From Macrostomum lignano (lineage: Eukaryota): 64,000 nt of DNA. Every line of letters begins with the position of its first letter. The stretch's first letter is position 1. The stretch covers positions 124,001-188,000 of the forward strand of contig NIVC01001512.1 in NCBI GenBank assembly GCA_002269645.1, written 5' to 3'. Below the pieces are notes generated by a model. It was not told the origin of the DNA, searched no databases, and saw only the letters and a program-made list of their open reading frames with translations. Positions 18,675 through 50,311 of this stretch are shown piece by piece. A program made the position numbers and the translations under genes.

Positions 18675-18677
18675 GAG

Positions 18678-18977
18678 CAGGTGTCGGGAATATTTTCTAC
18701 CTTGAAAAGCCAGTTAGGGACTCTATCAGATAGCTGTGTGTCTGATAGAAGAGTATGAGTAAAAGAGAGAAGCGAAGAACGGCAGGAGAGGATAGGAAAG
18801 GAAAGGAAAGGAGAGGGGAGGAGAGGAGTGGAAAAGAGAGGAGAGGAGATCCGCTGAGAAGAGACACAAACCCTGAGCGGCCCGGATTGCCATTTCGAAG
18901 TGTCAAAGGACCTGAGGGCCGGATAGAGAGGCTTCGAGGACCGCATCTGACCCGCGAAGCGGAGTTTGACGACCCTG
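18678..18977 (+). mobile_element. hAT (Charlie-like) MITE whose left end is the LINE target site
   Basis: CAGGTGTCGGGAA left end, GA-rich interior, AGACACAAACCCTGAGCGG..GGCCGGATAGAGAGGCTT family core, right end GTTTGACGACCCTG. Confidence 0.7.
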
Positions 18978-19598
18978 GAAAAATGCAAGCAGTCAAAAAC
19001 CTTCACTGGATCTTATAACAAAAATAAAAAAATAAATGGCCAGCATCAGCAAACTATTTTTAGGGCACATATTTTTACGTTCTGTTTAGCTTATTGTTTA
19101 CTAGACAAGTAGACACTTTCCAGTATATCCTCCCTATGGATATGGAACTAGAATCTTACGCCGCTATTGCTTGTTCGCTTCGAAAGAATAAGCTAATCGA
19201 GCGGGCATTTGAAGAGACGCTTAATCAATATTAGTTATAGTATCTAGATCCTGATGGATCGTCATTTTTGTAATAGAAAAAAACAATTTAGCCTTTAATT
19301 GTACTTTTTAGTACTAGGTAACAATATTTATAGTGCACTACCTTCAATGTACAATGCGATTTATTTTTAGCAACACGCTTAGACTTTACTACGAGCCGTA
19401 TTCTGAACTAAAACTAGTGGTTGTGGTCGCCTTCTATCTCTTATCCAATAACAAGCTTATTCAACTTTTATTGGATAGTGTTCTCATTCTCACTCTAAAC
19501 AGTATATAAAGCCATACCTAAATATCGTACACTTGGCATAGAACGCTAAACGTTTTACAAAGAAAGAAGATTTACAATTGAGTAAGATTAAACTTAAA

Positions 19599-31162: not shown

Positions 31163-32881
31163 ACAAACTTCGAACTACAACTTCGAATATATATACTCAT
31201 CATAGCTAAAGTAGTCTTACACGCCTAATTTTAAAGAAATATATATTTTCAATACTAATGTTATTTTACCTTAGTACCCTGCAGACAAATAGATAAATGT
31301 TGGTACAGTTTATATTAGAGTCCAGATTACATGTACATAAAAAAATACAAGTACTTCAGAGATACAGAAAACAATTTCTATAGAATTCCATTTAAATAGG
31401 AAATGTAGTGTGGTTATAATTTACTATTCTAAGAGTACTCATCTGAATGTCTATTCAGCGATCATTTAAAGCAGTTTGTATCACTTCGTGTATAGATATT
31501 TATGCTTTGTCATATAAAATAAATTGTTCATTGTACAATGACATTCAAATAAAACTGAATTTTGGTTTTTTTAATTCATCCGCAGCAGCTAAGCATACAG
31601 TTAGAATCTGCTGCTGCCTAATAGAAACTTAGAGACTCAAACAGTAGAAATTAACATAATTGAGCAATTAAGTTTACAAAAAAGTCAAAATTCTCAAGTT
31701 TAGCTTATCTTTAGGCTATTTATGGAGTGTTTGTTTTGGTTTCCGGATTGGATCTGACACCTGACCCTAACCTGTTCTTGCATCTGAGTCTAAAAAGCGA
31801 TTGAAAAGTTGTTCAATTGACTGCTCACGTTGCGTCTAGAATACTGCTTTTGCTGTTGCTGTCCTCAATGTATATTGATAACAATAAAGAATCAACGCCT
31901 CCTAATCCACACAGAGCCAGCTAAGAAAGGGAATGGCAAGGAATAGTACGCTCGTAGAAGTCAGCGTTGTATCAGGACGCAACGCTCGTAAATATTGCAA
32001 AAATATTTGAAGACCCGCTTGTTTACATGTAGCTGGTATTTAGTGATGCTTGCCTTCAAAAAGCATCCTATTCAACTGTTTTAAAGAAACCTGCACTTCC
32101 ATTGAAGGCTCAGAAGCTCTAAAATAGGTCTATTTATAATTTATTAAAAGTCTTAACCTGTTAAATATACATGCATTAAAAGTATTTGTCATTATAGCTC
32201 GTAGGCAACCTGGTAACTCATTTAAAACTTGCTATGCTTTTATGCAGACATACTGCTACTAATTCAACAAAGGATGAAGAAATTTAGGTGCAATATATAT
32301 ATATTATTCCATAACTTTAGCTGTCATGACAACGTTTTTTTACTAACCCTAATACTCGTATATGCTATTATGTACTGTTTTAGAAGACGAAAAAACTACT
32401 CGTAATATTTATGTTGCTTGGCTGAATATTTCACTTAGATCTCGTATTTATCTGTAGATTTGTAGATTTGTAGATTGTTTCGAACAACCTGGCGAAAAAT
32501 TAATTATCATTTTAAGTGCCACAGATCCGGAGTTATAAGCATTTAAAGTTTGGCTGCAATACAAACAAGCGGGCCTTCAAATAATTTTGCAATATTTACG
32601 AGCGTTCGTCCTGATACAACGGTAACTTTTAGTAGACCTTGGGCAAATGGTAAGCAAGAATGGTGTGACCAACTCAGATACGTCAACTTTAGTGTGTGTG
32701 GTGTGTGGTGTGTGTGTGTACTGGGAGTGCAGGCAGATAGGGCAGGAAAACTTGAATAGACAGTTTAACTAGTGAATGAAGACGCTGTCGTCTTCAAAGG
32801 TGGGACGATGGTTTATATTGTGTCCATTATTGTTTATGGCTATGACATCTATTTATTTAACCTAAATTGAGAGCTAAAAAG

Positions 32882-35800
32882 CCCCCCACGCTCCTGGCAT
32901 TAGTTAGTCTAGTGGTATAGTGGGGGACTGGCCGCCCCCCACGCCCCTGGCATTAGTTAGTCTAGTGGTATAGTGGGGGCTGGCCGCCCCCCACGCCCCT
33001 GGCATTAGTTAGTCTAGTGGTATAGTGGGGGCTGGCCGCCCCCCACGCCCCTGGCATTTGTTAGTCTAGTGGTATAGTGGGGGCTGGCCGCCCCCACGCC
33101 CCTGGCATTTATTAGTCTAGTGGTATAGTGGGGGGCTCGCCGCCCCCACGCCCCTGGCATTAGTTAGTCTAAGTGGTATAGTGGGGGCTGGCCACCCCCC
33201 ACGCCCCTGGCATTAGTTAGTCTAGTGGTATAGTGGGTGGCTGGCCGCCCCCCACGCCCCTGGCATTAGTTAGTCTAGTGGTATAGTGGGGGGCTGGCCG
33301 CCCCCCACGCCCCTGGCATTAGTTAGTCTAGTGGTATAGTGGGGGGCTGGCCGCCCCCACGCCCCTGGCATTAGTTAGTCTAGTGGTATAGTGGGGGCTG
33401 GCCGCCCCCACGCCCCTGGCATTAGTTAGTCTAGTGGTATAGTGGTATAGTGGGGGGCTAGCCGCCCCCACGCCCCTGGCATTAGTTAGTCTAGTGGTAT
33501 AGTGTGGGGCTGGCCGCCCCCCACGCCCCTGGCATTAGTTAGTCTAGTGGTATAGTGGGGGCTGGCCGCCCCCCACGCCCCTGGCATTAGTTAGTCTAGT
33601 GGTATAGTGGGGGCTGGCCACCCCCACGCCCCTGGCATTAGTTAGTCTAGTGGTATAGTGGGGGGCTGGCCACCCCCCACGCCCCTGGCATTAGTTAGTC
33701 TAGTGGTATAGTGGGGGGCTGGCCGCCCCCCACGCCCCTGGCATTAGTTAGTCTAGTGGTATAGTGGGGGGCTGGCCGCCCCCACGCCCCTGGCATTAGT
33801 TAGTCTAGTGGTATAGTGGGGGGGCTGGCCGCCCCCCACGCCCCTGGCATTAGTTAGTCTAAGTGGTATAGTGGGGGCTGGCCGCCCCCCACGCCCCTGG
33901 CATTAGTTAGTCTAGTGGTATAGTGGGGGGCTGGCCGCCCCCCACGCCCCTGGCATTAGTTAGTCTAGTGGTATAGTGGGGGCTGGCCGCCCCCCACGCC
34001 CCTGGCATTAGTTAGTCTAAGTGGTATAGTGGGGGGCTGGCCGCCCCCACGCCCCTGGCATTAGTTAGTCTAGTGGTATAGTGGGGGCTGGCCACCCCCA
34101 CGCCCCTGGCATTAGTTAGTCTAGTGGTATAGTGGGGGCTGGCCGCCCCCCACGCCCCTGGCATTTATTAGTCTAGTGGTATAGTGGGGGGCTCGCCGCC
34201 CCCACGCCCCTGGCATTAGTTAGTCTAAGTGGTATAGTGGGGGGCTGGCCGCCCCCCACGCCCCTGGCATTAGTTAGTCTAGTGGTATAGTGGTATAGTG
34301 GGGGGCTGGCCGCCCCCCACACCCTGGCATTAGTTAGTCTAGTGGTATAGTAGGGGGCTGGCCGCCCCCACGCCCCTGGCATTAGTTAGTCTAGTGGTAT
34401 AGTGGGGGCTGGCCGCCCCCACGCCCCTGGCATTAGTTAGTCTAGTGGTATAGTGGGGGGCTGGCCGCCCCCCACGCCCCTGGCATTAGTTAGTCTAAGT
34501 GGTATAGTGGGGGGCTTACCGCCCCCCACGCCCCTGGCATTAGTTAGTCTAGTGGTATAGTGGGGGGCTGGCCACCCCCCACGCCCCTGGCATTAGTTAG
34601 TCTAGTGGTATAGTGGGGGCTGGCCGCCCCCACGCCCCTGGCATTAGTTAGTCTAGTGGTATAGTGGGGGCTGGCCGCCCCCCACGCCCCTGGCATTAGT
34701 TAGTCTAGTGGTATAGTGGGGGGCTGGCCGCCCCCCACGCCCCTGGCATTAGTTAGTCTAAGTGGTATAGTGGGGGGCTGCCGCCCCCCACGCCCCTGGC
34801 ATTAGTTAGTCTAGTGGTATAGTGGGGGGCTGGCCGCCCCCACGCCCCTGGCATTAGTTAGTCTAGTGGTATAGTGGTATAGTGGGGGGGCTAGCCGCCC
34901 CCCACGCCCCTGGCATTAGTTAGTCTAGTGGTATAGTGGGGGGCTGGCCGCCCCCACGCCCCTGGCATTAGTTAGTCTAGTGGTATAGTAGGGGGCTGGC
35001 CGCCCCCCACGCCCCTGGCATTTATTAGTCTAGTGGTATAGTGGGGGGCTAGCCGCCCCCCACGCCCCTGGCATTAGTTAGTCTAGTGGTATAGTGGGGG
35101 GCTGGCCGCCCCCACGCCCCTGGCATTAGTTAGTCTAGTGGTATAGTGGGGGCTGGCCACCCCCCACGCCCCTGGCATTAGTTAGTCTAGTGGTATAGTG
35201 GGGGGCTGGCCACCCCCCACGCCCCTGGCATTAGTTAGTCTAGTGGTATAGTGGGGGGCTGGCCGCCCCCCACGCCCCTGGCATTAGTTAGTCTAGTGGT
35301 ATAGTGGGGGCTGGCCGCCCCCACGCCCCTGGCATTAGTTAGTCTAGTGGTATAGTGGGGGGCTGGCCGCCCCCCACGCCCCTGGCATTAGTTAGTCTAG
35401 TGGTATAGTGGGGGGCTGGCCGCCCCCACGCCCCTGGCATTAGTTAGTCTAGTGGTATAGTGGGGGCTGGCCGCCCCCCACGCCCCTGGCATTAGTTAGT
35501 CTAGTGGTATAGTGGGGGGCTGGCCGCCCCCACGCCCCTGGCATTAGTTAGTCTAGTGGTATAGTGGGGGCTGGCCACCCCCACGCCCCTGGCATTAGTT
35601 AGTCTAGTGGTATAGTGGGGGCTGGCCGCCCCCACGCCCCTGGCATTTATTAGTCTAGTGGTATAGTGGGGGGCTCGCCGCCCCCACGCCCCTGGCATTA
35701 GTTAGTCTAAGTGGTATAGTGGGGGCTGGCCGCCCCCCACGCCCCTGGCATTAGTTAGTCTAGTGGTATAGTGGTATAGTGGGGGCTGGCCGCCCCCACA

Positions 35801-36525
35801 CACCTGGCATTAGTTAGTCTAGTGGTATAGTAGGGGGCTGGCCGCCCCCACGCCCCTGGCATTAGTTAGTCTAGTGGTATAGTGGGGGGCTGGCCGCCCC
35901 CACGCCCCTGGCATTAGTTAGTCTAGTGGTATAGTGGGGGCTGGCCGCCCCCACGCCCCTGGCATTAGTTAGTCTAAGTGGTATAGTGGGGGCTTGCCGC
36001 CCCCACGCCCCTGGCATTAGTTAGTCTAGTGGTATAGTGGGGGCTGGCCACCCCCACGCCCCTGGCATTAGTTAGTCTAGTGGTATAGTGGGGGGCTGGC
36101 CGCCCCCACGCCCCTGGCATTAGTTAGTCTAGTGGTATAGTGGGGGCTGGCCGCCCCCACGCCCCTGGCATTAGTTAGTCTAGTGGTATAGTAGGGGGCT
36201 GGCCGCCCCCCACGCCCCTGGCATTTATTAGTCTAGTGGTATAGTGGGGGGCTGGCCGCCCCCCACGCCCCTGGCATTAGTTTCTCTAGTGGTATAGTGG
36301 GGGGCTGGCCGCCCCCCACGCCCCTGGCATTAGTTAGTCTAGTGGTATAGTGGGGGGCTGGCCGCCCCCCACGCCACTGGCATTAGTTAGTCTAGTGGTA
36401 TAGTGGGGGGCTGGCCGCCCCCCACACCCCTGGCATTAGTTTCTCTAGTGGTATAGTGGGGAGTTGGCCGCCCCCACGCCCCTGGCATTAGTTTGTCTAG
36501 TGGTATAGTGGAGGGCTGGCCGCCC
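32882..36525. repeat. ~51-bp satellite array 1 (GCCCCCACGCCCCTGGCATTAGTTAGTCTAGTGGTATAGTGGGGGCTGGCC), ~70 copies
   Basis: Directly visible. Confidence 0.95.
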
Positions 36526-36830
36526 CCACACCCCCGCTCCCCCACCCCTCCCGCGCGTTGTTGTTGGGGAGGGTGGTTGTTGTTGTGGGGTTTGCGTAAC
36601 GTGGGGGCTGCCGCCCCCACACCCCCGCTCCCCCACCCCTCCCGCGCGTTGTTGTTGGGGAGGGTGGTTGTTGTTGTGGGGTTTGCGTAACGTGGGGGCT
36701 GCCGCCCCACACCCCCGCTCCCCACCCCTCCCGCACATTGTTGTTGGGGAGGGTGGTTGTTGTTGTGGGGTTTGCGTAACGTGGGGGCTGCCGCCCCCAC
36801 ACCCCCGCTCCCCACCCCACCCCTCCGCAA
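36526..36830. repeat. ~90-bp GC/GT-rich secondary repeat (~3.3 copies); also at ~42395-42690; absent from unit 3
   Basis: CCCCCGCTCC recurs at 36531, 36622, 36712 and 36802. Confidence 0.9.
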
Positions 36831-37103
36831 CTTTTCCCACCTCTAACACATCTTTTTAGCATGCTAAAACTGCTTGTAAGCCTTTGGCGACCGCGCAACA
36901 CATGATACTTGCCGATATGTATCGTAATATTCTTTCTGCACTAACAAATCATCTGTGCCGCACTTTCAGCTTCACTCTTACTCTTTAATAAGGTATAGAA
37001 GGAAAGGAAAATTAAACAATCAATATTAAATTATATTCAAGTGAAAGAGAATTGAAAATACTAATAAATCCGTTCCTGCTAAAAAATTAAATATAAAAAA
37101 AAC

Positions 37104-37180
37104 TTGGCCCACTTGGGATTCGAACCCGTGTTTAGGCCATTTACAAAGCAACTGCCTTCGGCCCCGATCCATCTCTTACT
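37104..37180 (-). promoter_or_regulatory. tRNA-like segment (B box, weak A box) inside HINE unit 1; near-identical copy at ~42968-43045
   Basis: GGTTCGAATCC on the minus strand (37116-37126) followed by an oligo-T run. Confidence 0.5.
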
Positions 37181-38920
37181 TAAGCGAAGCTCTACAGTGC
37201 ACGCCGTTTATATCGAATATTCCCTATGGTAGCCACTTTTACGATTTTTGCTGCTTTTTCATACATTTCTGCTCGCTGCATCGCAGCGCCTTCATCTAAA
37301 AATGCGAGTCGCATGTCGTTACAGAGATAACATCAAGGCGCATTCATCTAATGCATTTTTAAAGTATGTCAACAAATTTTACGCCTCCTAGGCGCCAAAT
37401 TGTGCATTTTCACCTGTTCTGACAGGTATTCAAACAGGTATTAAGACCTATTAACTTAAGAATCAGTTTTCAAAACTAATTTAGTTGCACAGTGCATCCA
37501 TAGTGCTGTTTTTAGACACCAAAATTGAGTCTCTAGGCCTTGCCAATGCAGAGTTATTAGCAAAAGTATGCTCAAAATTTGCCCAAAAATAGCCTTCTCA
37601 AAATTCGGAGCCAATTTTCTCAAAAATACGAATTTTCCAGCCATATTGGCGTATGACCGGTGTAACTTCATCTATTCGACTAAACAATATTGAAAATGCA
37701 GAAAAATCGGTGCGCAAAATTTCTTATTTTTCCACTTCAAAGTTTGTACCCCAAAATGGGCCGTTTTTCACTTAACAGGTAAAAAGTACCTGTTAACAGG
37801 GTTTTTTCAGGAGTGTCTTATGTCATTCAAAAGGGCATCCGATGGGCTACAATTTGACGCCATACTCGAAAAACTTTGCCCCATTTTAAAAAAATTTCCT
37901 TAACAACGTCTGATTTTCTGCAGTGCCCCCCGGCCTCTTTTTTCCCTGGTTTTCGGGTCACTGCTCAGCACAGGTAGGTCCAAATGCTTAGAAAATTTAG
38001 GAAAACAAATTTCCATATGTTTGACACATCGTGTTAAAGTCTCACCACTGTAGCATAAAACACTTTTTCAAGTTTGAGGACTACTTTTTTAAAACGTGAC
38101 CCAATTTTTTGAAAATGTCGTTTTTAGGCACTCTTTGGCACCTGGGCAGGTTATTGATGGCCCAATAAGCCAAATCTCGATGTTTCCGAATAGAAGACAT
38201 CTATTTGAGTAATTTGGTGTAGAAATATTAAAAAATAAAGTTTTTAATCTCGACGAGATAGGCCTCACAAAAGTGCACTAAAAATTTGTACTTTTAAAGT
38301 GCAGATAGGCAGCCATGTGAAAAGTACATTTTAGCCCTAAAAACTATAGCGCATCAAACAGCCCCAGGTGTTATTGACGCTATGAGGCAGCTCAAAGGCC
38401 GCGCTATCGCGCGTCCTTTTCGCTGCGGTGAGGCAAAGTTGGAAAAAATGCCAATTTTTCGACCTCAAAAAACACGTTTTTTGTACTTTTAGCCTAGACG
38501 TTAAAGTACAATAAAAAAATCCATTTCTGATCATTGTAGCGTTCGAATGCCCGCGTTTACTGAGCCAGCCGCTAAGCGCTGCCATATTCTCAATCCTTAT
38601 TTTTTGAGATCAAAGTTTTTGACAAAGTCGAAAAAACGCAGTTTTTGGTTGCCATGGCAACCAAAACGCATTGCCATGGCAACCAACTATTGTGCATCCG
38701 ATAGCGCTAGGTCTTTGACACATTTTGGCAAAAACCGTTTGTAAATTGGTCGTACCGTTTTTTATTGGCAGCGTTTAAAAGTTGAAAAACGTCATTTTTA
38801 GTGTGTGCAACCACGTTACATCTTATCAGGGACGATTTCGCAAAAGTAAGCACCATAGAAAAAAATTCTCGCTTCGCTCGCCTTTTTTTCTATACTACTT
38901 ACTGGCTCATCGTCCCACAA

Positions 38921-41900
38921 CTAGTGAATGAAGACGCTGTCGTCTTCAAAGGTGGGACGATGGTTTATATTGTGTCCATTATTGTTTATGGCTATGACAT
39001 CTATTTATTTAACCTAAATTGAGAGCTAAAAAGCCCCCCACGCTCCTGGCATTAGTTAGTCTAGTGGTATAGTGGGGACTGGCCGCCCCCACGCCCCTGG
39101 CATTAGTTAGTCTAGTGGTATAGTGGGGGCTGGCCGCCCCCACGCCCCTGGCATTAGTTAGTCTAGTGGTATAGTGGGGGCTGGCCGCCCCCACGCCCCT
39201 GGCATTTGTTAGTCTAGTGGTATAGTGGGGGCTGGCCGCCCCACGCCCTGGCATTATTAGTCTAGTGGTATAGTGGGGGCTGCCGCCCCCCACGCCCCTG
39301 GCATTAGTTAGTCTAGTGGTATAGTGGGGGCTGGCCCCCCCACGCCCCTGGCATTAGTTAGTCTAGTGGTATAGTGGGGGCTGGCCGCCCCCCACGCCCT
39401 GGCATTAGTTAGTCTAGTGGTATAGTGGGGGGCTGGCCGCCCCCACGCCCCTGGCATTAGTTAGTCTAGTGGTATAGTGGGGGGCTGGCCGCCCCCCACG
39501 CCCCTGGCATTAGTTAGTCTAGTGGTATAGTGGGGGCTGGCCGCCCCCACGCCCCTGGCATTAGTTAGTCTAGTGGTATAGTGGTATAGTGGGGGGCTGC
39601 CGCCCCCACGCCCCTGGCATTAGTTAGTCTAGTGGTATAGTGGGGGGCTGGCCGCCCCCACGCCCCTGGCATTAGTTAGTCTAGTGGTATAGTGGGGGGC
39701 TGGCCGCCCCCACGCCCCTGGCATTAGTTAGTCTAGTGGTATAGTGGGGGGCTGGCCACCCCCACGCCCCTGGCATTAGTTAGTCTAGTGGTATAGTGGG
39801 GGGCTGGCCACCCCCACGCCCCTGGCATTAGTTAGTCTAGTGGTATAGTGGGGGCTGGCCGCCCCCACGCCCCTGGCATTAGTTAGTCTAGTGGTATAGT
39901 GGGGGGCTGGCCGCCCCCCACGCCCCTGGCATTAGTTAGTCTAGTGGTATAGTGGGGGGCTGGCCGCCCCCACGCCCCTGGCATTAGTTAGTCTAGTGGT
40001 ATAGTGGGGGCTGGCCGCCCCCCACGCCCCTGGCATTAGTTAGTCTAGTGGTATAGTGGGGGCTGGCCGCCCCCACGCCCCTGGCATTAGTTAGTCTAGT
40101 GGTATAGTGGGGGGCTGGCCGCCCCCACGCCCCTGGCATTAGTTAGTCTAGTGGTATAGTGGGGGGCTGGCCGCCCCCCACGCCCCTGGCATTAGTTAGT
40201 CTAGTGGTATAGTGGGGGGCTGGCCGCCCCCACGCCCCTGGCATTAGTTAGTCTAGTGGTATAGTGGGGGCTGGCCGCCCCCACGCCCCTGGCATTAGTT
40301 AGTCTAGTGGTATAGTGGGGGCTGCCGCCCCCACGCCCCTGGCATTAGTTAGTCTAAGTGGTATAGTGGGGGCTGGCCGCCCCCACGCCCCTGGCATTAG
40401 TTAGTCTAGTGGTATAGTGGTATAGTGGGGGCTGGCCGCCCCCCACGCCCTGGCATTAGTTAGTCTAGTGGTATAGTGGGGGCTGGCCGCCCCCCACGCC
40501 CCTGGCATTAGTTAGTCTAGTGGTATAGTGGGGGCTGGCCGCCCCCACGCCCCTGGCATTAGTTAGTCTAGTGGTATAGTGGGGGCTGGCCGCCCCCACG
40601 CCCCTGGCATTAGTTAGTCTAGTGGTATAGTGGGGGCTGGCCGCCCCCCACGCCCCTGGCATTAGTTAGTCTAGTGGTATAGTGGGGGCTGGCCGCCCCC
40701 ACGCCCCTGGCATTAGTTAGTCTAGTGGTATAGTGGGGGGCTGGCCGCCCCCCACGCCCCTGGCATTAGTTAGTCTAGTGGTATAGTGGGGGGCTGGCCG
40801 CCCCCACGCCCCTGGCATTAGTTAGTCTAGTGGTATAGTGGGGGGCTGGCCGCCCCCACGCCCCTGGCATTAGTTAGTCTAGTGGTATAGTGGGGGGCTG
40901 CCGCCCCCACGCCCCTGGCATTAGTTAGTCTAGTGGTATAGTGGGGGGCTGGCCGCCCCCACGCCCCTGGCATTAGTTAGTCTAGTGGTATAGTGGGGGG
41001 GCTGCCGCCCCCCACGCCCCTGGCATTAGTTAGTCTAGTGGTATAGTGGGGGGCTGGCCGCCCCCCACGCCCCTGGCATTAGTTAGTCTAGTGGTATAGT
41101 GGGGGCTGGCCGCCCCCCACGCCCCTGGCATTAGTTAGTCTAGTGGTATAGTGGGGGCTGCCGCCCCCACGCCCCTGGCATTAGTTAGTCTAGTGGTATA
41201 GTGGGGGCTGGCCGCCCCCACGCCCCTGGCATTAGTTAGTCTAGTGGTATAGTGGGGGGCTGGCCGCCCCCACGCCCCTGGCATTAGTTAGTCTAGTGGT
41301 ATAGTGGGGGGCTGGCCCCCCCACGCCCCTGGCATTAGTTAGTCTAGTGGTATAGTGGGGGCTGGCCGCCCCCACGCCCCTGGCATTAGTTAGTCTAGTG
41401 GTATAGTGGGGGGCTGGCCGCCCCCACGCCCCTGGCATTAGTTAGTCTAGTGGTATAGTGGGGGGCTGGCCGCCCCCACGCCCCTGGCATTAGTTAGTCT
41501 AGTGGTATAGTGGGGGGCTGGCCGCCCCCACGCCCCTGGCATTAGTTAGTCTAGTGGTATAGTGGGGGCTGGCCGCCCCCACGCCCCTGGCATTAGTTAG
41601 TCTAAGTGGTATAGTGGGGGCTGGCCGCCCCCCACGCCCCTGGCATTAGTTAGTCTAGTGGTATAGTGGGGGCTGGCCACGCCCCTGGCATTAGTTAGTC
41701 TAGTGGTATAGTGGGGGGCTGGCCGCCCCCACGCCCCTGGCATTAGTTAGTCTAGTGGTATAGTGGGGGGCTGGCCGCCCCCACGCCCCTGGCATTAGTT
41801 AGTCTAGTGGTATAGTGGGGGCTGGCCGCCCCCACGCCCCTGGCATTAGTTAGTCTAGTGGTATAGTGGGGGGCTGGCCGCCCACGCCCTGGCATTAGTT

Positions 41901-44784
41901 AGTCTAGTGGTATAGTGGGGGCTGGCCGCCCCCACGCCCCTGGCATTAGTTAGTCTAGTGGTATAGTGGGGGCTGGCCGCCCCCCACGCCCCTGGCATTA
42001 GTTAGTCTAGTGGTATAGTGGGGGGCTGGCCGCCCCCACGCCCCTGGCATTAGTTAGTCTAGTGGTATAGTGGGGGCTGGCCGCCCCCCACGCCCCTGGC
42101 ATTAGTTAGTCTAGTGGTATAGTGGGGGCTGGCCCCCCCACGCCCTGGCATTAGTTAGTCTAGTGGTATAGTGGGGGCTGGCCGCCCCCCACGCCCCTGG
42201 CATTAGTTAGTCTAGTGGTATAGTGGGGGCTGGCCGCCCCCCACGCCCCTGGCATTAGTTAGTCTAGTGGTATAGTGGGGGCTGGCCGCCCCCACACCCT
42301 GGCATTAGTTTCTCTAGTGGTATAGTGGGGAGTTGGCCGCCCCCACGCCCCTGGCATTAGTTTGTCTAGTGGTATAGTGGGGGCTGGCCGCCCCCACACC
42401 CCCGCTCCCCCACCCCTCCGCGCGTTGTTGTTGGGGAGGGTGGTTGTTGTTGTGGGGTTTGCGTAACGTGGGGGCTGCCGCCCCCACACCCCGCTCCCCC
42501 ACCCCTCCCGCGCGTTGTTGTTGGGGAGGGTGGTTGTTGTTGTGGGGTTTGCGTAACGTGGGGGCTGCCGCCCCCACACCCCGCTCCCCCACCCCTCCCG
42601 CACATTGTTGTTGGGAGGGTGGTTGTTGTTGTGGGTTTGCGTAACGTGGGGCTGCCGCCCCCACACCCCCGCTCCCCCACCCCACCCCTCCGCAACTTTT
42701 CCCACCTCTAACACATCTTTTTAGCATGCTAAAACTGCTTGTAAGCCTTTGGCGACCGCGCAACACATGATACTTGCCGATATGTATCGTAATATTCTTT
42801 CTGCACTAACAAATCATCTGTGCCGCACTTTCAGCTTCACTCTTACTCTTTAATAAGGTATAGAAGGAAAGGAAAATTAAACAATCAATATTAAATTATA
42901 TTCAAGTGAAAGAGAATTGAAAATACTAATAAATCCGTTCCTGCTAAAAAATTAAATATAAAAAAAACTTGGCCCACTTGGGATTCGAACCCGTGTTTAG
43001 GCCATTTACAAAGCAACTGCCTTCGGCCCCGATCCATCTCTTACTTAAGCGAAGCTCTACAGTGCACGCCGTTTATATCGAATATTCCCTATGGTAGCCA
43101 CTTTTACGATTTTTGCTGCTTTTTCATACATTTCTGCTCGCTGCATCGCAGCGCCTTCATCTAAAAATGCGAGTCGCATGTCGTTACAGAGATAACATCA
43201 AGGCGCATTCATCTAATGCATTTTTAAAGTATGTCAACAAATTTTACGCCTCCTAGGCGCCAAATTGTGCATTTTCACCTGTTCTGACAGGTATTCAAAC
43301 AGGTATTAAGACCTATTAACTTAAGAATCAGTTTTCAAAACTAATTTAGTTGCACAGTGCATCCATAGTGCTGTTTTTAGACACCAAAATTGAGTCTCTA
43401 GGCCTTGCCAATGCAGAGTTATTAGCAAAAGTATGCTCAAAATTTGCCCAAAAATAGCCTTCTCAAAATTCGGAGCCAATTTTCTCAAAAATACGAATTT
43501 TCCAGCCATATTGGCGTATGACCGGTGTAACTTCATCTATTCGACTAAACAATATTGAAAATGCAGAAAAATCGGTGCGCAAAATTTCTTATTTTTCCAC
43601 TTCAAAGTTTGTACCCCAAAATGGGCCGTTTTTCACTTAACAGGTAAAAAGTACCTGTTAACAGGTTTTTTCAGGAGTGTCTTATGTCATTCAAAAGGGC
43701 ATCCGATGGGCTACAATTTGACGCCATACTCGAAAAACTTTGCCCCATTTTAAAAAAATTTCCTTAACAACGTCTGATTTTCTGCAGTGCCCCCGGCCTC
43801 TTTTTTCCCTGGTTTTCGGGTCACTGCTCAGCACAGGTAGGTCCAAATGCTTAGAAAATTTAGGAAAACAAATTTCCATATGTTTGACACATCGTGTTAA
43901 AGTCTCACCACTGTAGCATAAAACACTTTTTCAAGTTTGAGGACTACTTTTTTAAAACGTGACCCAATTTTTTGAAAATGTCGTTTTTAGGCACTCTTTG
44001 GCACCTGGGCAGGTTATTGATGGCCCAATAAGCCAAATCTCGATGTTTCCGAATAGAAGACATCTATTTGAGTAATTTGGTGTAGAAATATTAAAAAATA
44101 AAGTTTTTAATCTCGACGAGATAGGCCTCACAAAAGTGCACTAAAAATTTGTACTTTTAAAGTGCAGATAGGCAGCCATGTGAAAAGTACATTTTAGCCC
44201 TAAAAACTATAGCGCATCAAACAGCCCCAGGTGTTATTGACGCTATGAGGCAGCTCAAAGGCCGCGCTATCGCGCGTCCTTTTCGCTGCGGTGAGGCAAA
44301 GTTGGAAAAAATGCCAATTTTTCGACCTCAAAAAACACGTTTTTTGTACTTTTAGCCTAGACGTTAAAGTACAATAAAAAAATCCATTTCTGATCATTGT
44401 AGCGTTCGAATGCCCGCGTTTACTGAGCCAGCCCGCTAAGCGCTGCCATATTCTCAATCCTTATTTTTTGAGATCAAAGTTTTTGACAAAGTCGAAAAAA
44501 CGCAGTTTTTGGTTGCCATGGCAACCAAAACGCATTGCCATGGCAACCAACTATTGTGCATCCGATAGCGCTAGGTCTTTGACACATTTTGGCAAAAACC
44601 GTTTGTAAATTGGTCGTACCGTTTTTTATTGGCAGCGTTTAAAAGTTGAAAAACGTCATTTTTAGTGTGTGCAACCACGTTACATCTTATCAGGGACGAT
44701 TTCGCAAAAGTAAGCACCATAGAAAAAAATTCTCGCTTCGCTCGCCTTTTTTTCTATACTACTTACTGGCTCATCGTCCCACAA
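38921..44784 (-). mobile_element. HINE-like element, unit 2 (~5.86 kb), head-to-tail with unit 1
   Basis: Junction CATCGTCCCACAA-CTAGTGAATGAAGACG at 38908-38936; non-satellite part nearly identical to unit 1. Confidence 0.8.
39033..42394. repeat. ~51-bp satellite array 2, ~65 copies
   Basis: Directly visible. Confidence 0.95.
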
Positions 44785-44897
44785 CTAGTGAATGAAGACG
44801 CTGTCGTCTTCAAAGGTGGGACGATGGGTATATATTGTGTCCATTATTGTTTATGGCTATGACATCTATTTATTTAACCTAAATTGAGAGCTAAAAA

Positions 44898-47275
44898 GCC
44901 CCCCCCACGCCTGGCATTAGTTAGTCTAGTGGTATAGTGGGGGGCTGGCCGCCCCCACGCCCCTGGCATTAGTTAGTCTAGTGGTATAGTGGGGGCTGGC
45001 CGCCCCCACGCCCCTGGCATTAGTTAGTCTAGTGGTATAGTGGGGGCTGGCCGCCCCCACGCCCCTGGCATTTATTAGTCTAGTGGTATAGTGGGGGGCT
45101 GGCCGCCCCCCACGCCCCTGGCATTAGTTAGTCTAGTGGTATAGTGGTATAGTGGGGGCTGGCCGCCCCCCACGCCCCTGGCATTAGTTAGTCTAGTGGT
45201 ATAGTGGGGGGCTGGCCGCCCCCCACGCCCCTGGCATTAGTTAGTCTAGTGGTATAGTGGGGGCTGGCCGCCCCCCACGCCCCTGGCATTAGTTAGTCTA
45301 GTGGTATAGTGGGGGGCTGGCCGCCCCCCACGCCCCTGGCATTAGTTAGTCTAAGTGGTATAGTGGGGGCTGGCCGCCCCCCACGCCCCTGGCATTAGTT
45401 AGTCTAGTGGTATAGTGGGGGCTGGCCGCCCCCCACGCCCCTGGCATTAGTTAGTCTAGTGGTATAGTGGGGGGCTGGCCGCCCCCCACGCCCCTGGCAT
45501 TAGTTAGTCTAGTGGTATAGTGGGGGGCTGGCCGCCCCCCACGCCCCTGGCATTAGTTAGTCTAGTGGTATAGTGGGGGGCTGGCCGCCCCCCACGCCCC
45601 TGGCATTAGTTAGTCTAAGTGGTATAGTGGGGGCTGGCCGCCCCCACGCCCCTGGCATTAGTTAGTCTAGTGGTATAGTGGGGGCTGGCCGCCCCCACGC
45701 CCCTGGCATTAGTTAGTCTAGTGGTATAGTGGGGGCTGGCCGCCCCCCACGCCCCTGGCATTAGTTAGTCTAGTGGTATAGTGGGGGGCTGGCCGCCCCC
45801 ACGCCCCTGGCATTAGTTAGTCTAGTAGTATAGTGGGGGGCTGGCCGCCCCCACGCCCCTGGCATTAGTTAGTCTAGTGGTATAGTGGGGGCTGGCCGCC
45901 CCCACGCCCCTGGCATTAGTTAGTCTAGTAGTATAGTGGGGGCTGGCCGCCCCCACGCCCCTGGCATTTGTTAGTCTAGTGGTATAGTGGGGGGCTCGCC
46001 GCCCCCACGCCCCTGGCATTAGTTAGTCTAGTAGTATAGTGGGGGGCTCGCCGCCCCCACGCCCCTGGCATTAGTTAGTCTAGTGGTATAGTGGGGGCTG
46101 GCCGCCCCCCACGCCCCTGGCATTAGTTAGTCTAGTAGTATAGTGGAGGGCTGGCCGCCCCCCACGCCCCTGGCATTAGTTAGTCTAGTGGTATAGTGGG
46201 GGCTGGCCGCCCCCACGCCCCTGGCATTAGTTAGTCTAGTGGTATAGTGGTATAGTGGGGGCTGGCCGCCCCCCACGCCCCTGGCATTAGTTAGTCTAGT
46301 GGTATAGTGGGGGCTGGCCGCCCCCCACGCCCCTGGCATTTATTAGTCTAGTGGTATAGTGGGGGGCTGGCCGCCCCCACGCCCCTGGCATTAGTTAGTC
46401 TAGTGGTATAGTGGTATAGTGGGGGGCTAGCCGCCCCCACGCCCCTGGCATTAGTTAGTCTAGTGGTATATTGGGGGGCTGGCCGCCCCCCACGCCCCTG
46501 GCATTTATTAGTCTAGTAGTATAGTGGGGGCCTGGCCGCCCCCCCGCCCCTGGCATTAGTTAGTCTAGTGGTATAGTGGGGGCTGGCCGCCCCCACGCCC
46601 CTGGCATTAGTTAGTCTAGTGGTATAGTGGGGGCTGGCCGCCCCCCACGCCCCTGGCATTAGTTAGTCTAGTAGTATAGTGGGGGGCTGGCCGCCCCCAC
46701 GCCCCTGGCATTTGTTAGTCTAGTGGTATAGTGGGGGGCTCGCCACCCCACGCCCCTGGCATTAGTTAGTCTAGTGGTATAGTGGGGGCTGGCCGCCCCC
46801 ACGCCCCTGGCATTAGATAGTCTAGTGGTATAGTGGGGGGCTGGCCGCCCCCCACGCCCCTGGCATTAGTTAGTCTAGTGATATAGTGGTATAGTGGGGG
46901 CTGGCCGCCCCCCACGCCCCTGGCATTAGTTAGTCTAGTGGTATAGTGGGGGCTGGCCGCCCCCCACGCCCCTGGCATTAGTTAGTCTAGTAGTATAGTG
47001 GGGGGCTGGCCGCCCCCCACGCCCCTGGCATTTGTTAGTCTAGTGGTATAGTGGGGGGCTCGCCACCCCCACGCCCCTGGCATTAGTTAGTCTAGTGGTA
47101 TAGTGGGGGGCTGGCCGCCCCCACGCCCCTGGCATTAGATAGTCTAGTGGTATAGTGGGGGGCTGGCCGCCCCCACGCCCCTGGCATTAGTTAGTCTAGT
47201 GATATAGTGGTATAGTGGGGGGCTGGCCGCCCCCCACGCCCCTGGCACTAGTTAGTCTAGTGGTAAAGGGGGGGC
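44898..47275. repeat. ~51-bp satellite array 3, ~46 copies
   Basis: Directly visible. Confidence 0.95.
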
Positions 47276-47587
47276 TGGCTCCCCCACCGCTCCACCACCC
47301 CTCGAGAACTTTTCCCACATCTAAACACGTCTTTGTAATATGTTACAACTATATTCTAGCCTTCAAACGACCAGACATCAAATACTTGCTTGCCGACATG
47401 TATCGTAATATACTTTTTGCACTAACAATCATAGGTGCCGCACTAAAAGATTCACTGTTACTCTTTAAATACGTATAAAAAGAAAAATAAATTTAAATAA
47501 ATGTAATTTAATTGTATAAAAAACATAATAGTTAGAGAAATAAAAATACTAAAAATCTGTTTGCTCTAAAAGAACTTTAAACTAAAA

Positions 47588-47668
47588 AAATTTTCGGATC
47601 ACTTGGGAATCGAACCCTGCAGCACTCAAATGTATGGATAACTAACTCTGCCACTGAGCCACAAATTG
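47588..47668 (-). promoter_or_regulatory. Type-2 Pol III promoter (tRNA-like) inside HINE unit 3
   Basis: A box TGGCTCAGTGG (47661-47651), B box GGTTCGATTCC (47616-47606), 45-nt spacing, T-run downstream; no acceptor stem. Confidence 0.65.
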
Positions 47669-50311
47669 ATTACTAAGTTAGCCTATAGTACACGTATTTT
47701 ATATCGAATATCGCTAATAGCAGCCATTTCTACCATTTTTGCTGCTTTTTCATACATTTCTGCTCGTTGCATCGCAACGCTTCTACCTAAAAATGCGAGT
47801 CGCATGTCGTTACAGAGATAACATCAAGGCGCATTCACCTAATGCATTTTTAAAGTATGTCAACAAATTTTACGCCTCCTAGGCGCCACATTGTGCATTT
47901 TCACCTGTTCTGACAGGTAATCAAACAGGTATTGAGACCTGTTAACCTAAGAATCAGTTTTCAAAACTTATTTAGTTGCATAGTAAATTCGTAGTGCTGT
48001 TTTTAGACACCAAAATTGAGTCTCTAGGCCTTGCCAATGCAGAGTTATTAGCAAAAGTATGCTCAAAATTTTCCTAAAAATGGCCTACTCAAAATTCAGA
48101 GTCAATTTTCTCAAAAATACGAATTTTCCAGCCATATTGGCGTATGACCGGTGTAACTTCAGCTATTCGACTAAACAATATTGAAAATGCAGAAAAATCG
48201 GTGCGCAAAAATTCTTATTTTTTGACTTCAAAGTTTGTACCCCCAAATGGGCCGTTTTTCAATTAACAGGTAAAAAGTACCTGTTAACAGGGGTTTTTTT
48301 AGGAGTGTCTTATGTCATTCAAAAGGGCATCCGATGGGCTACAATTTGACACCATACTCGAAAAAATTCGCCCCGTTTTGAAAAAATTTCCTTAACAACG
48401 TCTGATTTTCTGCAGTGCCCCCCGGCCTCTTTTTTCCCTGGTTTCCGGGTCACTGCTCAGCACAGGTAGGTCCAATTGCTTAGAAAATTCAGGAAAACAA
48501 ATTTCCATACGTTTGACACGTTGTGTTATAGTCTCAACACCGTAGCATAAAACACTTTTTCAAGTTTGAGGACTACTTTTTTAAAACGTGACCCATTTTT
48601 TCGAAAACGACGTTTTTAGGCACTTTTCGACACCTAGGCAAGTTATTAGTGTCCCAATCGGCCAGATCTCGATGTTTCCGAATAGAAGACATCCAGTTGA
48701 GTGATTTGGTGTAGAAATATTAAAAAATAAAGTTTTTCATCTCGTCGCGATAGGCCTCTCAAAAGTGCACTAAAAATTTGTACTTTTAAACAGCAGATAG
48801 GCAGCCATGTGAAAAGTACATTTTAGCCCAAAAAACTATACCGCATCAAACAGCCCCAAGTGTTTTTGAGGCTAGGAGGCAGCTCAAAGGCCGCGCTATC
48901 GCGCGTCCTTTTCGCTGCGGTAAGGCAAAGTTGAAAAAAATGCCAATTTTTCGACCTCAAAAAACACGTTTTTTGTACTTTTAGCCTAGACGTTAAAGTA
49001 CAATAAAAAAATCCATTTCTGATCATTGTAGCGTTCGAATGCCCGCGTTTACTGAGCCAGCCCGCTAAGCGCTGCCATATTCTCAATCCTTATTTTTTGA
49101 GATCAAAGTTTTTGACAAAGTCGAAAAAACGCAGTTTTTGGTTGCCATGGCAACCAAAACGCGTCGCCATGACAACCAAACACTGCGGATCTGTTAGCCC
49201 TAGGTCTTTGACGCATTTTGGCAAAAACCGTTTGTAAATCGGTCGCACCGTTTTTTATTGGCAGCGTTTCAAAGTTGAAAAACGTCATTTTCCTATGTGA
49301 CACCGTTGCTACATCTTATCAGGGACGATTTCGCAAAAGTAAGCAGCATAGAAAAAAATTCTCGCTTCGCTCGCATTTTTTCCTATACTACTTACTGGCT
49401 CATCGTCCCACAACTAGCATAGTTCGTGCGTGGGCTGACACCAGCAGACAGACTGACCTATATAGCAAAAACACGCACTTTTATGAGTCATCTGTCACTT
49501 CAATAACATTTAGCAGTCCAAGTGAGTAGGACTACGAGACCAGGATTTTTTAAGACGGGGGGGGGGTTAGTTGTTGAAAGGTAGCAGCAAGGAGGGCAGG
49601 CCACCCCCCAGGCCCCCATTAAAAACCTTAGCGGCCCGAAGAGGGGTGGGGGCGGACCCCCCCCCCACGCGCTCTCCCCCCTGTATGCCCAGGGACTTCT
49701 AAAAATAGCATCACAGCAGTTGAGAGACAGCAGTTGATGCTATTTTTAGGAGTCCTTGCATGGTGCGTCCGGGGTAGACGACCTGTCAAGCTGCACTTTT
49801 CTGTACCTGACAAATAACGATAGTATAGCATTTCGATGCTTTACGAGCATTCATATACGAGCGATAAGGCTTATCTTATCCTTAGGTCGACTTTAAATTA
49901 AAGATTGAAATTCAGTCAGCTAAAAAAGCATTATTGCATTATTTTAATCTAAACAAACAGACACAAACAGGCCTGTTCACCCGCCTAAATGCGCAATGTA
50001 TTTGATGAAGCAGATGAGAACAAAAATTTGAACCAAAAATGCTTTCAAGCTATTGTAATAGCAAATGCTTAATTATAATTGCATGGTTCCCTAGGCCTAG
50101 CTGTTTGTTTAGGGAAACAACAATACTATAGTGGAGAGTAGGGGTCCTGACTTGTACTGATCCCGGAATGGAGGCTACCGCAATACAATTCTTCATGAAG
50201 CACATAAATACATCCTGTGTTTTGCTGTATATCATACACTAAGCGTTGCAAACTTAAATTGAGTTATTTGCTCCATCTGTTAGTTTCCTATCATTGGCCA
50301 TTGCTAAATAT

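What the first reader, a model, noticed from the sequence alone, without database searches (positions are those of the whole stretch)
32882..47275. The satellite monomer looks like a multimerised Helitron 3' terminator
Seen: on the element's sense (minus) strand every ~51-bp monomer reads GTGGGGGC-GGCCA-GCCCCCAC (8-bp GC stem) + TATACCA + CTAG. This is the same hairpin-spacer-CTAG grammar as the element's real end, repeated ~180 times upstream of it. Established: Helitron 3' ends are a short GC-rich hairpin a few to ~12 nt before CTRR. Inference: the satellite is an amplified ancestral terminator generated by termination bypass or re-initiation, and may provide many alternative stop points that produce truncated copies, small circles and array-length variation. 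This would be a direct mechanistic link from rolling-circle termini to satellite birth.
Basis: partly seen in the sequence, partly recalled or inferred. Interest (0 to 1): 0.85.

Follow-up and report, generated by a model that had tools for sequence, protein, structure and literature searches.

The report
Hairpin minisatellite inside tandem Helentron-type transposons
The region holds three head-to-tail copies of a non-coding rolling-circle transposon of the Helentron/Helitron2 type, each with its own 52-bp hairpin-containing repeat array just before its 3' end; this layout is already known, and nothing in the window shows that the repeat is a multiplied transposon stop signal.

Summary
The motif is real. 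About 176 monomers of 51-53 bp read GTGGGGGC-GGCCA-GCCCCCAC + TATACCA + CTAG on the minus strand; 93% keep CTAG and 76% keep hairpin plus CTAG. They form three arrays (45, 65 and 69 copies), not one. Each array lies inside one of three abutting copies of a 4.6-6.2 kb non-coding element (49413->32769, minus strand).

The element has the anatomy of a Helentron-associated interspersed element (HINE): 5' TT, an 11-nt subterminal inverted repeat, a 5' internal inverted repeat, central tandem repeats, a 3' subterminal repeat, and an 8-bp palindrome 4 nt before CTAG. It is not a canonical Helitron. Tandem repeats inside such elements are well documented.

The terminator-origin idea has no support here:
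- The monomer has no sequence similarity to the real end (p about 0.6).
- CTAG 3-12 nt after a hairpin arises by chance about 4% of the time.
- The arrays begin and end at the hairpin motif, not at CTAG.
- A neighbouring 91-bp repeat reuses the hairpin without CTAG.
- All three copies run through 45-69 motifs to the same true end.
- Array differences look like ordinary unequal exchange.

The decisive test, a genome-wide census of truncation points, could not be run because no other copies were found in any collection.

The parts
44785..49413 (-). Element copy A (4629 bp): 5' TT + subTIR, a body that differs from copies B/C, no 91-bp repeats, a 45-unit 52-bp array, and the 3' tail
   Evidence: Termini located by exact motifs. 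First 1.65 kb of the body ~93% identical to B/C, next ~450 bp only 64-79%, tail 98%.
38921..44784 (-). Element copy B (5864 bp), directly abutting copy A (junction ...CACTAG|TTGTGGGACG...)
   Evidence: Body has 0 substitutions against copy C, only single-base indels.
32769..38920 (-). Element copy C (6152 bp), directly abutting copy B; 3' flank starts TTAAACTG
44901..47279 (-). 52-bp array of copy A (45 units)
   Evidence: TRF; monomer parsing; contains a 6-monomer block duplicated in tandem.
39035..42402 (-). 52-bp array of copy B (65 units)
32881..36535 (-). 52-bp array of copy C (69 units)
   Evidence: contains an internal duplication of a multi-monomer block.
36508..36822 (-). 3.5 units of a 91-bp repeat just upstream of array C. 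It carries the same hairpin (GTGGGGGC-GGCA-GCCCCCAC), followed by GTTACGCAAACC and no CTAG
42377..42687 (-). 3.5 units of the 91-bp repeat upstream of array B
38908..38918 (-). 5' subterminal inverted repeat GTGGGACGATG, 2 nt from the 5' end (copy C); also at 44772-44782 (B) and 49401-49411 (A)
38829..38836 (-). 5' internal inverted repeat ATCGTCCC, which pairs with the 5' subTIR; the first ~100 nt fold into one long stem-loop
   Evidence: DNA fold -19.3 kcal/mol, z = -5.8, 0 of 200 shuffles as good.
32800..32810 (-). 3' subterminal inverted repeat CATCGTCCCAC (copy C); also at 38952-38962 (B) and 44816-44826 (A)
32777..32796 (-). 3' palindrome TGAAGACG-ACAG-CGTCTTCA (8-bp stem), the likely real terminator hairpin; also at 38929-38948 (B) and 44793-44812 (A)
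   Evidence: DNA fold -7.8 kcal/mol, z = -4.2.
32769..32772 (-). Terminal CTAG of copy C, 4 nt after the palindrome and followed by TT; also at 38921-38924 (B) and 44785-44788 (A)
32773..32880 (-). Non-repetitive 3' tail between array and terminus. The array ends in a partial monomer (...GCCAGGAGC GTGGGGGGC | TTTTTAGCTC) at the same point in all three copies
49414..49417 (-). CTAG in the 5' flanking DNA immediately before the TT of copy A, so both outer boundaries read CTAG^TT
   Evidence: The flank shows no similarity to the tail or the monomer.

Best explanation
Window 32769-49413 (minus strand) holds three directly abutting, head-to-tail copies of a non-autonomous rolling-circle transposon of the Helentron/Helitron2 group, that is, a HINE-like element. 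The 52-bp satellite is the element's 'central repeat' module, which in this group typically lies just upstream of the short 3' terminal module.

Shown: the termini, the subterminal inverted repeats, the 5' stem-loop, the 3' palindrome + CTAG, the lack of coding capacity, and the precise junctions between copies.

Also shown: each array starts at a full hairpin that follows a unique G-rich sequence. Each array ends with a partial monomer that stops right after the hairpin's 5' arm (GTGGGGG(G)C). The array is therefore bracketed by the same 8-9-nt motif 52 nt apart.

Inferred: the repeat arose inside the element when a 52-nt segment lying between two GTGGGGGC direct repeats was duplicated, by slippage or unequal exchange. 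It then grew and keeps changing by unequal crossing-over and replication slippage, probably helped by the stable GC hairpin. Copies B and C have no substitution differences in 2.4 kb of body, yet their arrays differ in length and in the order of monomer variants, and they contain multi-monomer block duplications.

Inferred: the A-B dimer arose by terminator read-through or by insertion next to a resident 3' end. The B-C pair is a very recent whole-unit duplication.

The resemblance of hairpin-7 nt-CTAG to the real end (hairpin-4 nt-CTAG) is most likely coincidental.
For: HINE anatomy (criteria from PMC4067079; PMC7492417):
- 5' subTIR 2 nt from the end.
- 3' subTIR 31-41 nt from the end.
- Palindrome 8 nt from the end.
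- 5' subTIR pairs with an internal repeat, z = -5.8.
- T's at both boundaries.
- No Pfam domain in any element ORF.

Tandem repeats within or beside such elements are documented in Drosophila, mites, mosquitoes, oysters, Xenopus Heli2Xen, Paramecium and Meloidogyne.

Array phase and boundaries are identical in the three copies. The same hairpin occurs in the pre-array sequence and in the 91-mer.

B and C bodies show 0 substitutions, while their arrays differ (65 vs 69 units) and carry block duplications. Divergence between A and B/C is mosaic: ~93%, then 64-79%, then ~98% for array and tail. This indicates exchange between modules.

The monomer is not similar to the ends. The chance level of the grammar is 4% for CTAG and 17% for CTRR. 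Two other minisatellites in the same window also carry stems of 6 bp or more, and one of them overlaps a CTAG.
Against: - No autonomous Rep/helicase partner was seen, no empty site was available, and no other genomic copies were found, so membership rests on structure alone.
- The 5' flank is G/T rather than a T-run.
- Array boundaries can be remodelled, so phase is suggestive evidence, not proof.
- The B-C duplicate could be an assembly artefact.
- Homopolymer-length differences suggest long-read consensus noise in the arrays.
Confidence: 0.7

Rival explanations
1. The monomer is a former 3' terminator (hairpin + spacer + CTAG) that was multiplied by termination bypass or re-initiation. It still works as a weak alternative stop, producing 3'-truncated copies, n x 52-nt circles and array-length variation.
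For: The pattern match with the real end is genuine. CTAG at that distance has ~4% chance probability. This family really ends in CTAG after a hairpin. Helitron 3' ends are loosely defined, and both bypass and premature truncation occur experimentally (PMC4778049). Array lengths differ among copies.
Against: - No sequence similarity between the monomer and the true end.
- The monomer lacks the 3' subTIR that precedes the palindrome in this element type.
- CTAG is followed by AC in the monomer but by TT at both true boundaries.
- Neither array edge is in CTAG phase.
- The 91-bp repeat propagates the hairpin without CTAG.
- CTAG is not preferentially conserved.
- Three of three copies pass 45-69 motifs and stop at the true end.
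- In Helraiser, a foreign hairpin or a changed loop performs like no hairpin.
- The array variation looks like block duplication by unequal exchange.
Confidence: 0.08
2. The array is a pre-existing host satellite that the element captured (the filler-DNA or capture model). It is not a repeat born from the element's own sequence.
For: The monomer has no detectable similarity to the tail, the unique body or the flanks. In oysters, related HINE flanks carry unrelated repeats, and capture is one of the two models discussed (PMC7492417).
Against: The hairpin with its G-rich leader is shared by the unique pre-array sequence of copy A, the 91-mer of B/C and the 52-mer. The array is bracketed by the same motif in all copies. 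No free-standing array of this monomer is present in the window.
Confidence: 0.15
3. The three-copy arrangement, or at least the B-C pair, is an assembly artefact or a plain segmental duplication unrelated to rolling-circle transposition.
For: B and C bodies differ only by single-base indels, mostly in homopolymers. This is typical of consensus noise between two reads of the same sequence.
Against: The arrays of B and C differ in unit number and in variant order. Copy A is truly divergent yet joined to B by the same precise junction as B to C.
Confidence: 0.1

Closest known systems
HINEs / DINE-1 (Helentron-associated interspersed elements; Thomas, Vadnagara & Pritham 2014, PMC4067079)
   Same: Non-coding. 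11-15-nt subterminal inverted repeats, with the 5' one 2-4 nt from the end. A 5' internal repeat pairing with the subTIR (DINE-1 type). Central tandem repeats. A 3' palindrome 8-35 nt from the end. T's at the boundaries and no target duplication.
   Different: This element ends in CTAG, which that paper reports for a 'proto-Helentron' with 5' TT / 3' CTAG. No DINE-1-type microsatellite was noted in the 5' part. The body is long (2.1-2.4 kb) and the arrays are long (45-69 units). No autonomous partner is known.
Cg_HINE elements of the Pacific oyster (Vojvoda Zeljko et al. 2020, PMC7492417) and related bivalve elements (pearl, DTC84, MgE)
   Same: Left flank (subTIR + IR), satellite-like central array, right flank (subTIR + palindrome). 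Some elements carry two consecutive repeat types, as with the 91-mer plus 52-mer here. Modules are exchanged between families.
   Different: Oyster monomers are 140-180 bp and arrays mostly hold 5 or fewer units (maximum 29). Here the monomer is 52 bp, has a strong GC hairpin, and arrays hold 45-69 units.
Tandem arrays of Helitrons from missed termination or adjacent insertion (Pritham & Feschotte 2007; Xiong, Dooner & Du 2016; Helraiser, PMC4778049)
   Same: [quoted passage not shown] Different subfamilies directly abut each other.
   Different: The plant arrays typically have many 5' ends and a single 3' end (truncated inner copies). Here all three copies keep complete 3' ends.
Minisatellites within or beside Helitron-like elements in Paramecium (PMC13085455), Xenopus Heli2Xen (PMC12001565) and Meloidogyne (PMC13404089)
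   Same: In Paramecium, ~44-nt repeats end 42-168 nt before the presumed 3' terminal sequence; here the array ends 112 nt before the end. In Meloidogyne, palindromes inside Helitron-like sequences form tandem minisatellite-like loci. In Xenopus, Helitron2-type elements give more tandem arrays than Helitron1.
   Different: Different element clades and unrelated sequences. None of these papers claims that the monomer is a copy of the terminator.
Canonical Helitron 3' terminator (hairpin ~11 nt before CTRR; Helraiser)
   Same: Both the real end and the monomer show a short hairpin followed within a few nt by CTAG.
   Different: The element fails other canonical Helitron features (5' TC, A|T target, absence of inverted repeats). 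In Helraiser, terminator function depends on the hairpin's own loop, not on just any hairpin.

Membership tests
HINE / non-autonomous Helentron-Helitron2 group (HLE2) | 11-15-nt subterminal inverted repeats; the 5' one 2-4 nt from the 5' end, the 3' one some tens of nt from the 3' end | tested here: met
   GTGGGACGATG starts at nt 3 of each copy. CATCGTCCCAC lies 31 nt (its last base) to 41 nt (its first base) from the 3' end. Both are perfect complements in all three copies. The published range is 38-60 nt.
HINE / non-autonomous Helentron-Helitron2 group (HLE2) | Palindrome (stem-loop) between the 3' subTIR and the 3' end, 8-35 nt from the end | tested here: met
   TGAAGACG-ACAG-CGTCTTCA ends 8 nt from the terminus; fold z = -4.2.
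HINE / non-autonomous Helentron-Helitron2 group (HLE2) | Insertion within TT / T-rich DNA without target-site duplication, confirmed by an empty site | tested here: inconclusive
   TT is present at the 5' start, at both internal junctions and at the 3' flank. The flanks are not T-rich, CTAGTT occurs at both outer boundaries, and no empty site was available.
HINE / non-autonomous Helentron-Helitron2 group (HLE2) | No coding capacity of its own | tested here: met
   Longest body ORF is 82 aa. No Pfam match at E <= 0.1 for five of the nine element ORFs of 60 aa or more (four body ORFs and one ORF across the 91-bp repeat).
HINE / non-autonomous Helentron-Helitron2 group (HLE2) | An autonomous partner encoding Rep/helicase (plus endonuclease for Helentrons) with the same termini | not testable with these tools
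   No such ORF was seen among the window's ORFs of 130 aa or more (only some were scanned against Pfam). The source genome could not be reached.
HINE / non-autonomous Helentron-Helitron2 group (HLE2) | Central tandem repeats between the 5' and 3' modules (frequent, not obligatory) | tested here: met
   52-bp arrays in all copies, plus 91-bp repeats in B and C.
Canonical Helitron (Helitron1 / HLE1) | 5' TC terminus | tested here: not met
   The element begins TTGTGGG.
Canonical Helitron (Helitron1 / HLE1) | 3' CTRR with a hairpin about 11 nt upstream | tested here: met
   CTAG lies 4 nt after an 8-bp-stem hairpin.
Canonical Helitron (Helitron1 / HLE1) | No terminal or subterminal inverted repeats; insertion between A and T | tested here: not met
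   11-nt subTIRs are present. The 5' flanking base is G (or T), not A.
   The best local alignment is CACTAG only; p = 0.6 against shuffles.
   The arrays start at the hairpin and end after its 5' arm, about 28-30 nt past the last CTAG, identically in all three copies.
   There are no further copies in the window or in the viral, prokaryotic-genome or metagenome collections.

The most novel reading that the evidence does not exclude
This Helentron-type family is cut after CTAG at its 3' end and also prefers to insert at CTAG^TT. That would make it self-tandemising: both outer boundaries and both internal junctions read CTAG^TT. Under the same reading, its internal hairpin-CTAG monomers act as weak decoy terminators that occasionally release 3'-truncated copies or n x 52-nt circles, so the transposase itself would help seed and reshape the satellite.
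Probability: 0.07. Interest if true: 0.7.

Novelty: new member of a known kind. Interest (0 to 1): 0.28.

Why it matters
As it stands, this is one more example of a well-described pattern: non-autonomous Helentron/Helitron2-type transposons carrying and spreading satellite-like arrays. It is a clean example, with full termini, two nested repeat types that share one hairpin, and arrays that change while the flanks stay identical. It shows how fast such arrays evolve relative to their carriers.

It would tie satellite birth directly to the enzymology of rolling-circle termination. It needs a genome-wide census or biochemistry, and the evidence in this window leans the other way.

Tried and rejected
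- **Other copies, to test truncation points.** The exact monomer 26-mer found nothing in metagenome, viral or prokaryotic-genome contigs. The 3' end pattern also found nothing.
- **The bare 'grammar' pattern** GTGGGGGC-N5-GCCCCCAC-N7-CTAG hit nine metagenome contigs. All are single, non-tandem sites with unrelated loops, spacers and flanks, so they were rejected as irrelevant.
- **Organism identification and other loci through proteins.** The SRAP-domain exon found no relatives. Exact look-ups of four window ORFs are not on record. The organism remains unidentified; an NXF-type export-factor gene and an SRAP/HMCES-like gene suggest a metazoan (inference).
- **Literature search for the sequences themselves** returned only chance primer matches.
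- **Idea that the hairpin arms (GTGGGGGC/GCCCCCAC) are diverged copies of the subTIRs (GTGGGACG/CGTCCCAC).** Only GTGGG/CCCAC is shared, which is within chance by local alignment (p = 0.95). Rejected.
- **Idea that the 5' flank is the remnant of another copy or a degenerate monomer.** No significant similarity.
- **Idea that the tail or the pre-array body holds a degenerate monomer.** No similarity under two scoring schemes.
- **tRNA-like stretches in the bodies.** Not recognised by ARAGORN or Rfam.
- **Simple unequal crossover between the arrays of A and B as the origin of the B-C duplicate.** This predicts that the middle copy keeps A's tail, but its tail is identical to C's. That specific version is not supported.
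- **Oyster supplementary table of HINE palindromes**, wanted for a cross-family test of 'monomer mimics terminator'. It is illegible in the held copy.

Full report
**1. What is in the sequence**

Tandem Repeats Finder reports three separate arrays of a 52-53-bp unit: 32881-36535 (69 copies), 39035-42402 (65) and 44901-47279 (45). Arrays of a 91-bp unit lie at 36508-36822 and 42377-42687.

On the minus strand the 52-bp unit reads GTGGGGGC GGCCA GCCCCCAC TATACCA CTAG ACTAACTAATGCCAGGGGC. I split the arrays at an anchor that does not involve CTAG and obtained 176 monomers, 174 of normal length:
- 162 of 174 contain CTAG.
- 144 match the hairpin pattern.
- 133 have hairpin plus downstream CTAG.
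- 123 have exactly the 7-nt spacer.

The string TATACCACTAG occurs 157 times in the window, always inside this region. The hairpin is the dominant predicted DNA structure of the monomer (-12 kcal/mol, z = -2.0).

The region is not one satellite of about 180 units upstream of a single end. It is three arrays separated by two non-repetitive stretches of about 2.4 kb.

**2. The carrier element**

Exact-motif searches locate three copies each of three features:
- a 5' motif, TT-GTGGGACGATG;
- its reverse complement, CATCGTCCCAC;
- a terminal block, TGAAGACG-ACAG-CGTCTTCA-TTCA-CTAG.

These define three directly abutting, head-to-tail units on the minus strand: A 49413->44785 (4629 bp), B 44784->38921 (5864 bp) and C 38920->32769 (6152 bp). 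Both internal junctions read ...CACTAG|TTGTGGGACG...

Each unit has the same layout:
- The 5' end, whose first ~100 nt fold into one long stem-loop because ATCGTCCC about 80 nt inside pairs with the subterminal repeat (z = -5.8).
- A 2.1-2.4-kb body without coding capacity. The longest ORF is 82 aa and there are no Pfam matches.
- 3.5 units of the 91-bp repeat, in B and C only.
- The 52-bp array.
- A 112-116-bp tail with the 3' subterminal repeat, the 8-bp palindrome (z = -4.2) and CTAG.

No fragment of the element occurs elsewhere in the window.

**3. Classification**

The features match the published definition of Helentron-associated interspersed elements (HINE, DINE-1-like):
- 12-15-nt subterminal inverted repeats 2-4 nt from the 5' end and some tens of nt from the 3' end;
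- a palindrome 8-35 nt from the 3' end;
- T's at the boundaries and no target duplication;
- frequent central tandem repeats;
- in the DINE-1 type, a 5' internal repeat (PMC4067079; PMC7492417).

[quoted passage not shown] The combination of 5' TT and 3' CTAG has been reported for a 'proto-Helentron'.

The element fails the canonical Helitron features of 5' TC, an A|T target and absence of inverted repeats. It happens to hold for this family's real end. But the terminal signal in this group also includes the subterminal repeat, which the monomer lacks.

**4. Is the monomer a copy of the terminator?**

I tested this in several ways.

(a) Sequence. Local alignment of a monomer dimer against the 3' tail, the 5' end and the copy-to-copy junction finds only CACTAG or GTGGG. 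These scores are no better than shuffled controls (p = 0.6-0.95). More permissive scoring against the tail and the pre-array body gives the same result.

(b) Chance of the pattern. With the hairpin fixed, I shuffled the other 30 nt. CTAG then falls 3-12 nt downstream in 4.3% of trials and CTRR in 17%. Among 98 other 7-bp hairpins in the window, 3 have CTAG and 13 have CTRR at that distance. Among roughly 15 other tandem-repeat families in the window, a 39-bp unit contains the perfect 12-nt palindrome TGTCTATAGACA. A 33-bp unit contains GGTCAT-AAGG-ATGACC overlapping a CTAG. Palindromic minisatellite units are therefore common here, and even the full 'grammar' recurs by chance.

(c) Phase. All three arrays begin with a complete hairpin that follows a unique G-rich leader. 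All three end with a partial monomer that stops right after the hairpin's 5' arm (...GCCAGGAGC GTGGGGGGC|TTTTTAGCTC), about 28-30 nt beyond the last CTAG. Units generated by cleavage and re-initiation at CTAG would be expected to leave at least one edge in CTAG phase.

(d) The 91-bp repeat carries the same hairpin and G-rich leader, followed by GTTACGCAAACC with no CTAG. Copy A, which lacks the 91-mers, has the leader and hairpin once at the body-array border. What is shared and propagated is the hairpin, not hairpin plus CTAG.

(e) Conservation. CTAG columns show no substitutions, but neither do many neighbouring columns such as TAATGCCAG. The commonest small variant apart from homopolymer length is CTTAG, in 12 of 175 monomers, and it destroys the motif.

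(f) Use. All three copies run through 45-69 motif copies and stop at the same true terminus.

(g) Experiment in the literature. In Helraiser, replacing the hairpin with that of another Helitron, or changing its loop, reduced activity to the level of a hairpin deletion. Exchanging only the stem kept about 90% of activity (PMC4778049). A generic GC hairpin before CTAG should therefore not be assumed to terminate. That system is a canonical Helitron, so this is an analogy, not a test.

**5. How the arrays behave**

B and C bodies have no substitutions over 2.38 kb and differ only by single-base indels. Their arrays nevertheless differ in unit number. They share the same landmark variants in the same order, with extra block duplications in C. 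Array A contains a 6-monomer block duplicated in tandem. This is the signature of unequal exchange and slippage acting much faster than point mutation.

A differs from B/C in a mosaic way (tail figure): the first 1.65 kb is about 93% identical, the next ~450 bp only 64-79%, and the tail about 98%. This points to module exchange or homogenisation between copies.

A simple crossover between the arrays of A and B does not explain the B-C pair, because the middle copy's tail matches C's, not A's. Read-through during transposition, another unequal exchange, or an assembly error remain possible.

**6. Best explanation**

The array is bracketed by GTGGGGG(G)C 52 nt apart. The most economical origin is therefore duplication of a 52-nt segment between two short direct repeats inside the element, followed by expansion through unequal exchange and slippage. 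The GC hairpin plausibly promotes this.

The element itself is a HINE-type non-autonomous rolling-circle transposon. The three-copy tandem fits known behaviour of this superfamily, namely missed termination or insertion next to a resident 3' end. I put this at about 0.7. The main uncertainty is the origin step, where capture of a host satellite is the chief alternative.

**7. What is known already**

Tandem repeats inside or next to Helitron-like elements, and their role in spreading satellites, are well documented:
- Drosophila DINE-1;
- mite and mosquito HINEs;
- oyster Cg_HINE;
- Xenopus Heli2Xen;
- Paramecium Helitrons, with ~44-nt repeats ending 42-168 nt before the 3' terminal sequence;
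- palindromic minisatellite-like loci in Meloidogyne Helitron-like sequences.

Rolling-circle models for tandem amplification of whole or truncated Helitrons also exist (Xiong et al. 2016, as summarised). In the papers I read, I did not find the specific claim that a monomer is a multiplied terminator. The idea is new as a hypothesis but has no support from this window.

**8. Limits**

No other copy of the element or the monomer could be retrieved. The organism could not be identified. The window's NXF-type and SRAP/HMCES-like genes suggest a metazoan (inference).

The verdict is 'unsupported and leaning against', not 'refuted'.

Noticed in passing
window 49414-49417 (minus strand), with 32767-32772 and the junctions at 38919-38924 and 44783-44788: The host DNA just 5' of copy A ends in CTAG directly before the element's TT. 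Both outer boundaries and both internal junctions therefore read CTAG^TT. This is either chance (about 1/256) or a hint that the family prefers to insert after a CTAG, for instance after a resident 3' end, which would make it self-tandemising.
   Followed up: partly
window 36508-36822 and 42377-42687: A 91-bp repeat (3.5 units) is present in copies B and C but absent from A. It reuses the same GC hairpin and G-rich leader as the 52-mer, followed by unrelated CA-rich sequence. It folds into an extended structure (-24.6 kcal/mol).
   Followed up: partly
window ~37093-37200 (copy C; the matching segment of copy B was not located) and ~47585-47663 (copy A), minus strand: tRNA-like stretches (D-arm-like GCTCAGTGGCAGAG in A; T-arm GGTTCGAATCC / GGTTCGATTCC) followed by a T-run. 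They lie in the one segment where A and B/C are only 64-79% identical. ARAGORN and Rfam do not recognise them. They may be captured or decayed tRNA/SINE pieces.
   Followed up: partly
window 19578-22817 (+), repeat at 19764-22234: A 1079-aa open reading frame contains 43 near-identical 57-bp (19-aa, SSAPGIEHQMEETDHSLAR) tandem units. A second ORF at 29454-30560 starts with a similar N-terminus. No Pfam match for the second ORF; the first was not scanned.
   Followed up: no
window 59672-60625: A 39-bp minisatellite (24 units) whose unit contains the perfect 12-nt palindrome TGTCTATAGACA. It lies between the ORFs carrying the NXF NTF2 and LRR domains, so probably in an intron. I used it as a control showing that palindromic minisatellite units occur here away from Helitron ends.
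   Followed up: partly
window 54041-54149: A 33-bp repeat (3.2 units) whose unit has the hairpin GGTCAT-AAGG-ATGACC overlapping a CTAG. The hairpin-CTAG pattern thus arises again in an unrelated repeat.
   Followed up: no
window 53077-54038 (-): An ORF with an SRAP (HMCES-like) domain (Pfam E = 1.5e-25) runs on into a 28-bp tandem repeat (53184-53483). A protein search with the domain found no close relatives in the large protein collection.
   Followed up: partly
window 17881-18705 (+) and surroundings: A retroelement fragment with RNase H and zf-RVT domains. It overlaps a long antisense ORF (17269-18462).
   Followed up: no
window 58948-59397 and 61883-62368 (-): Exons of a nuclear RNA export factor (NXF) gene: NTF2-like and LRR domains. 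This suggests a metazoan source.
   Followed up: no
loci L001-L005, L007, L009 (metagenome contigs): A conserved site ...GGGAGCATAA...GTGGGGGC-N5-GCCCCCAC-AT.ACAACTAG-GATAAC... recurs in seven unrelated metagenome contigs. It looks like a conserved hairpin in some microbial or phage lineage and is unrelated to this finding.
   Followed up: no
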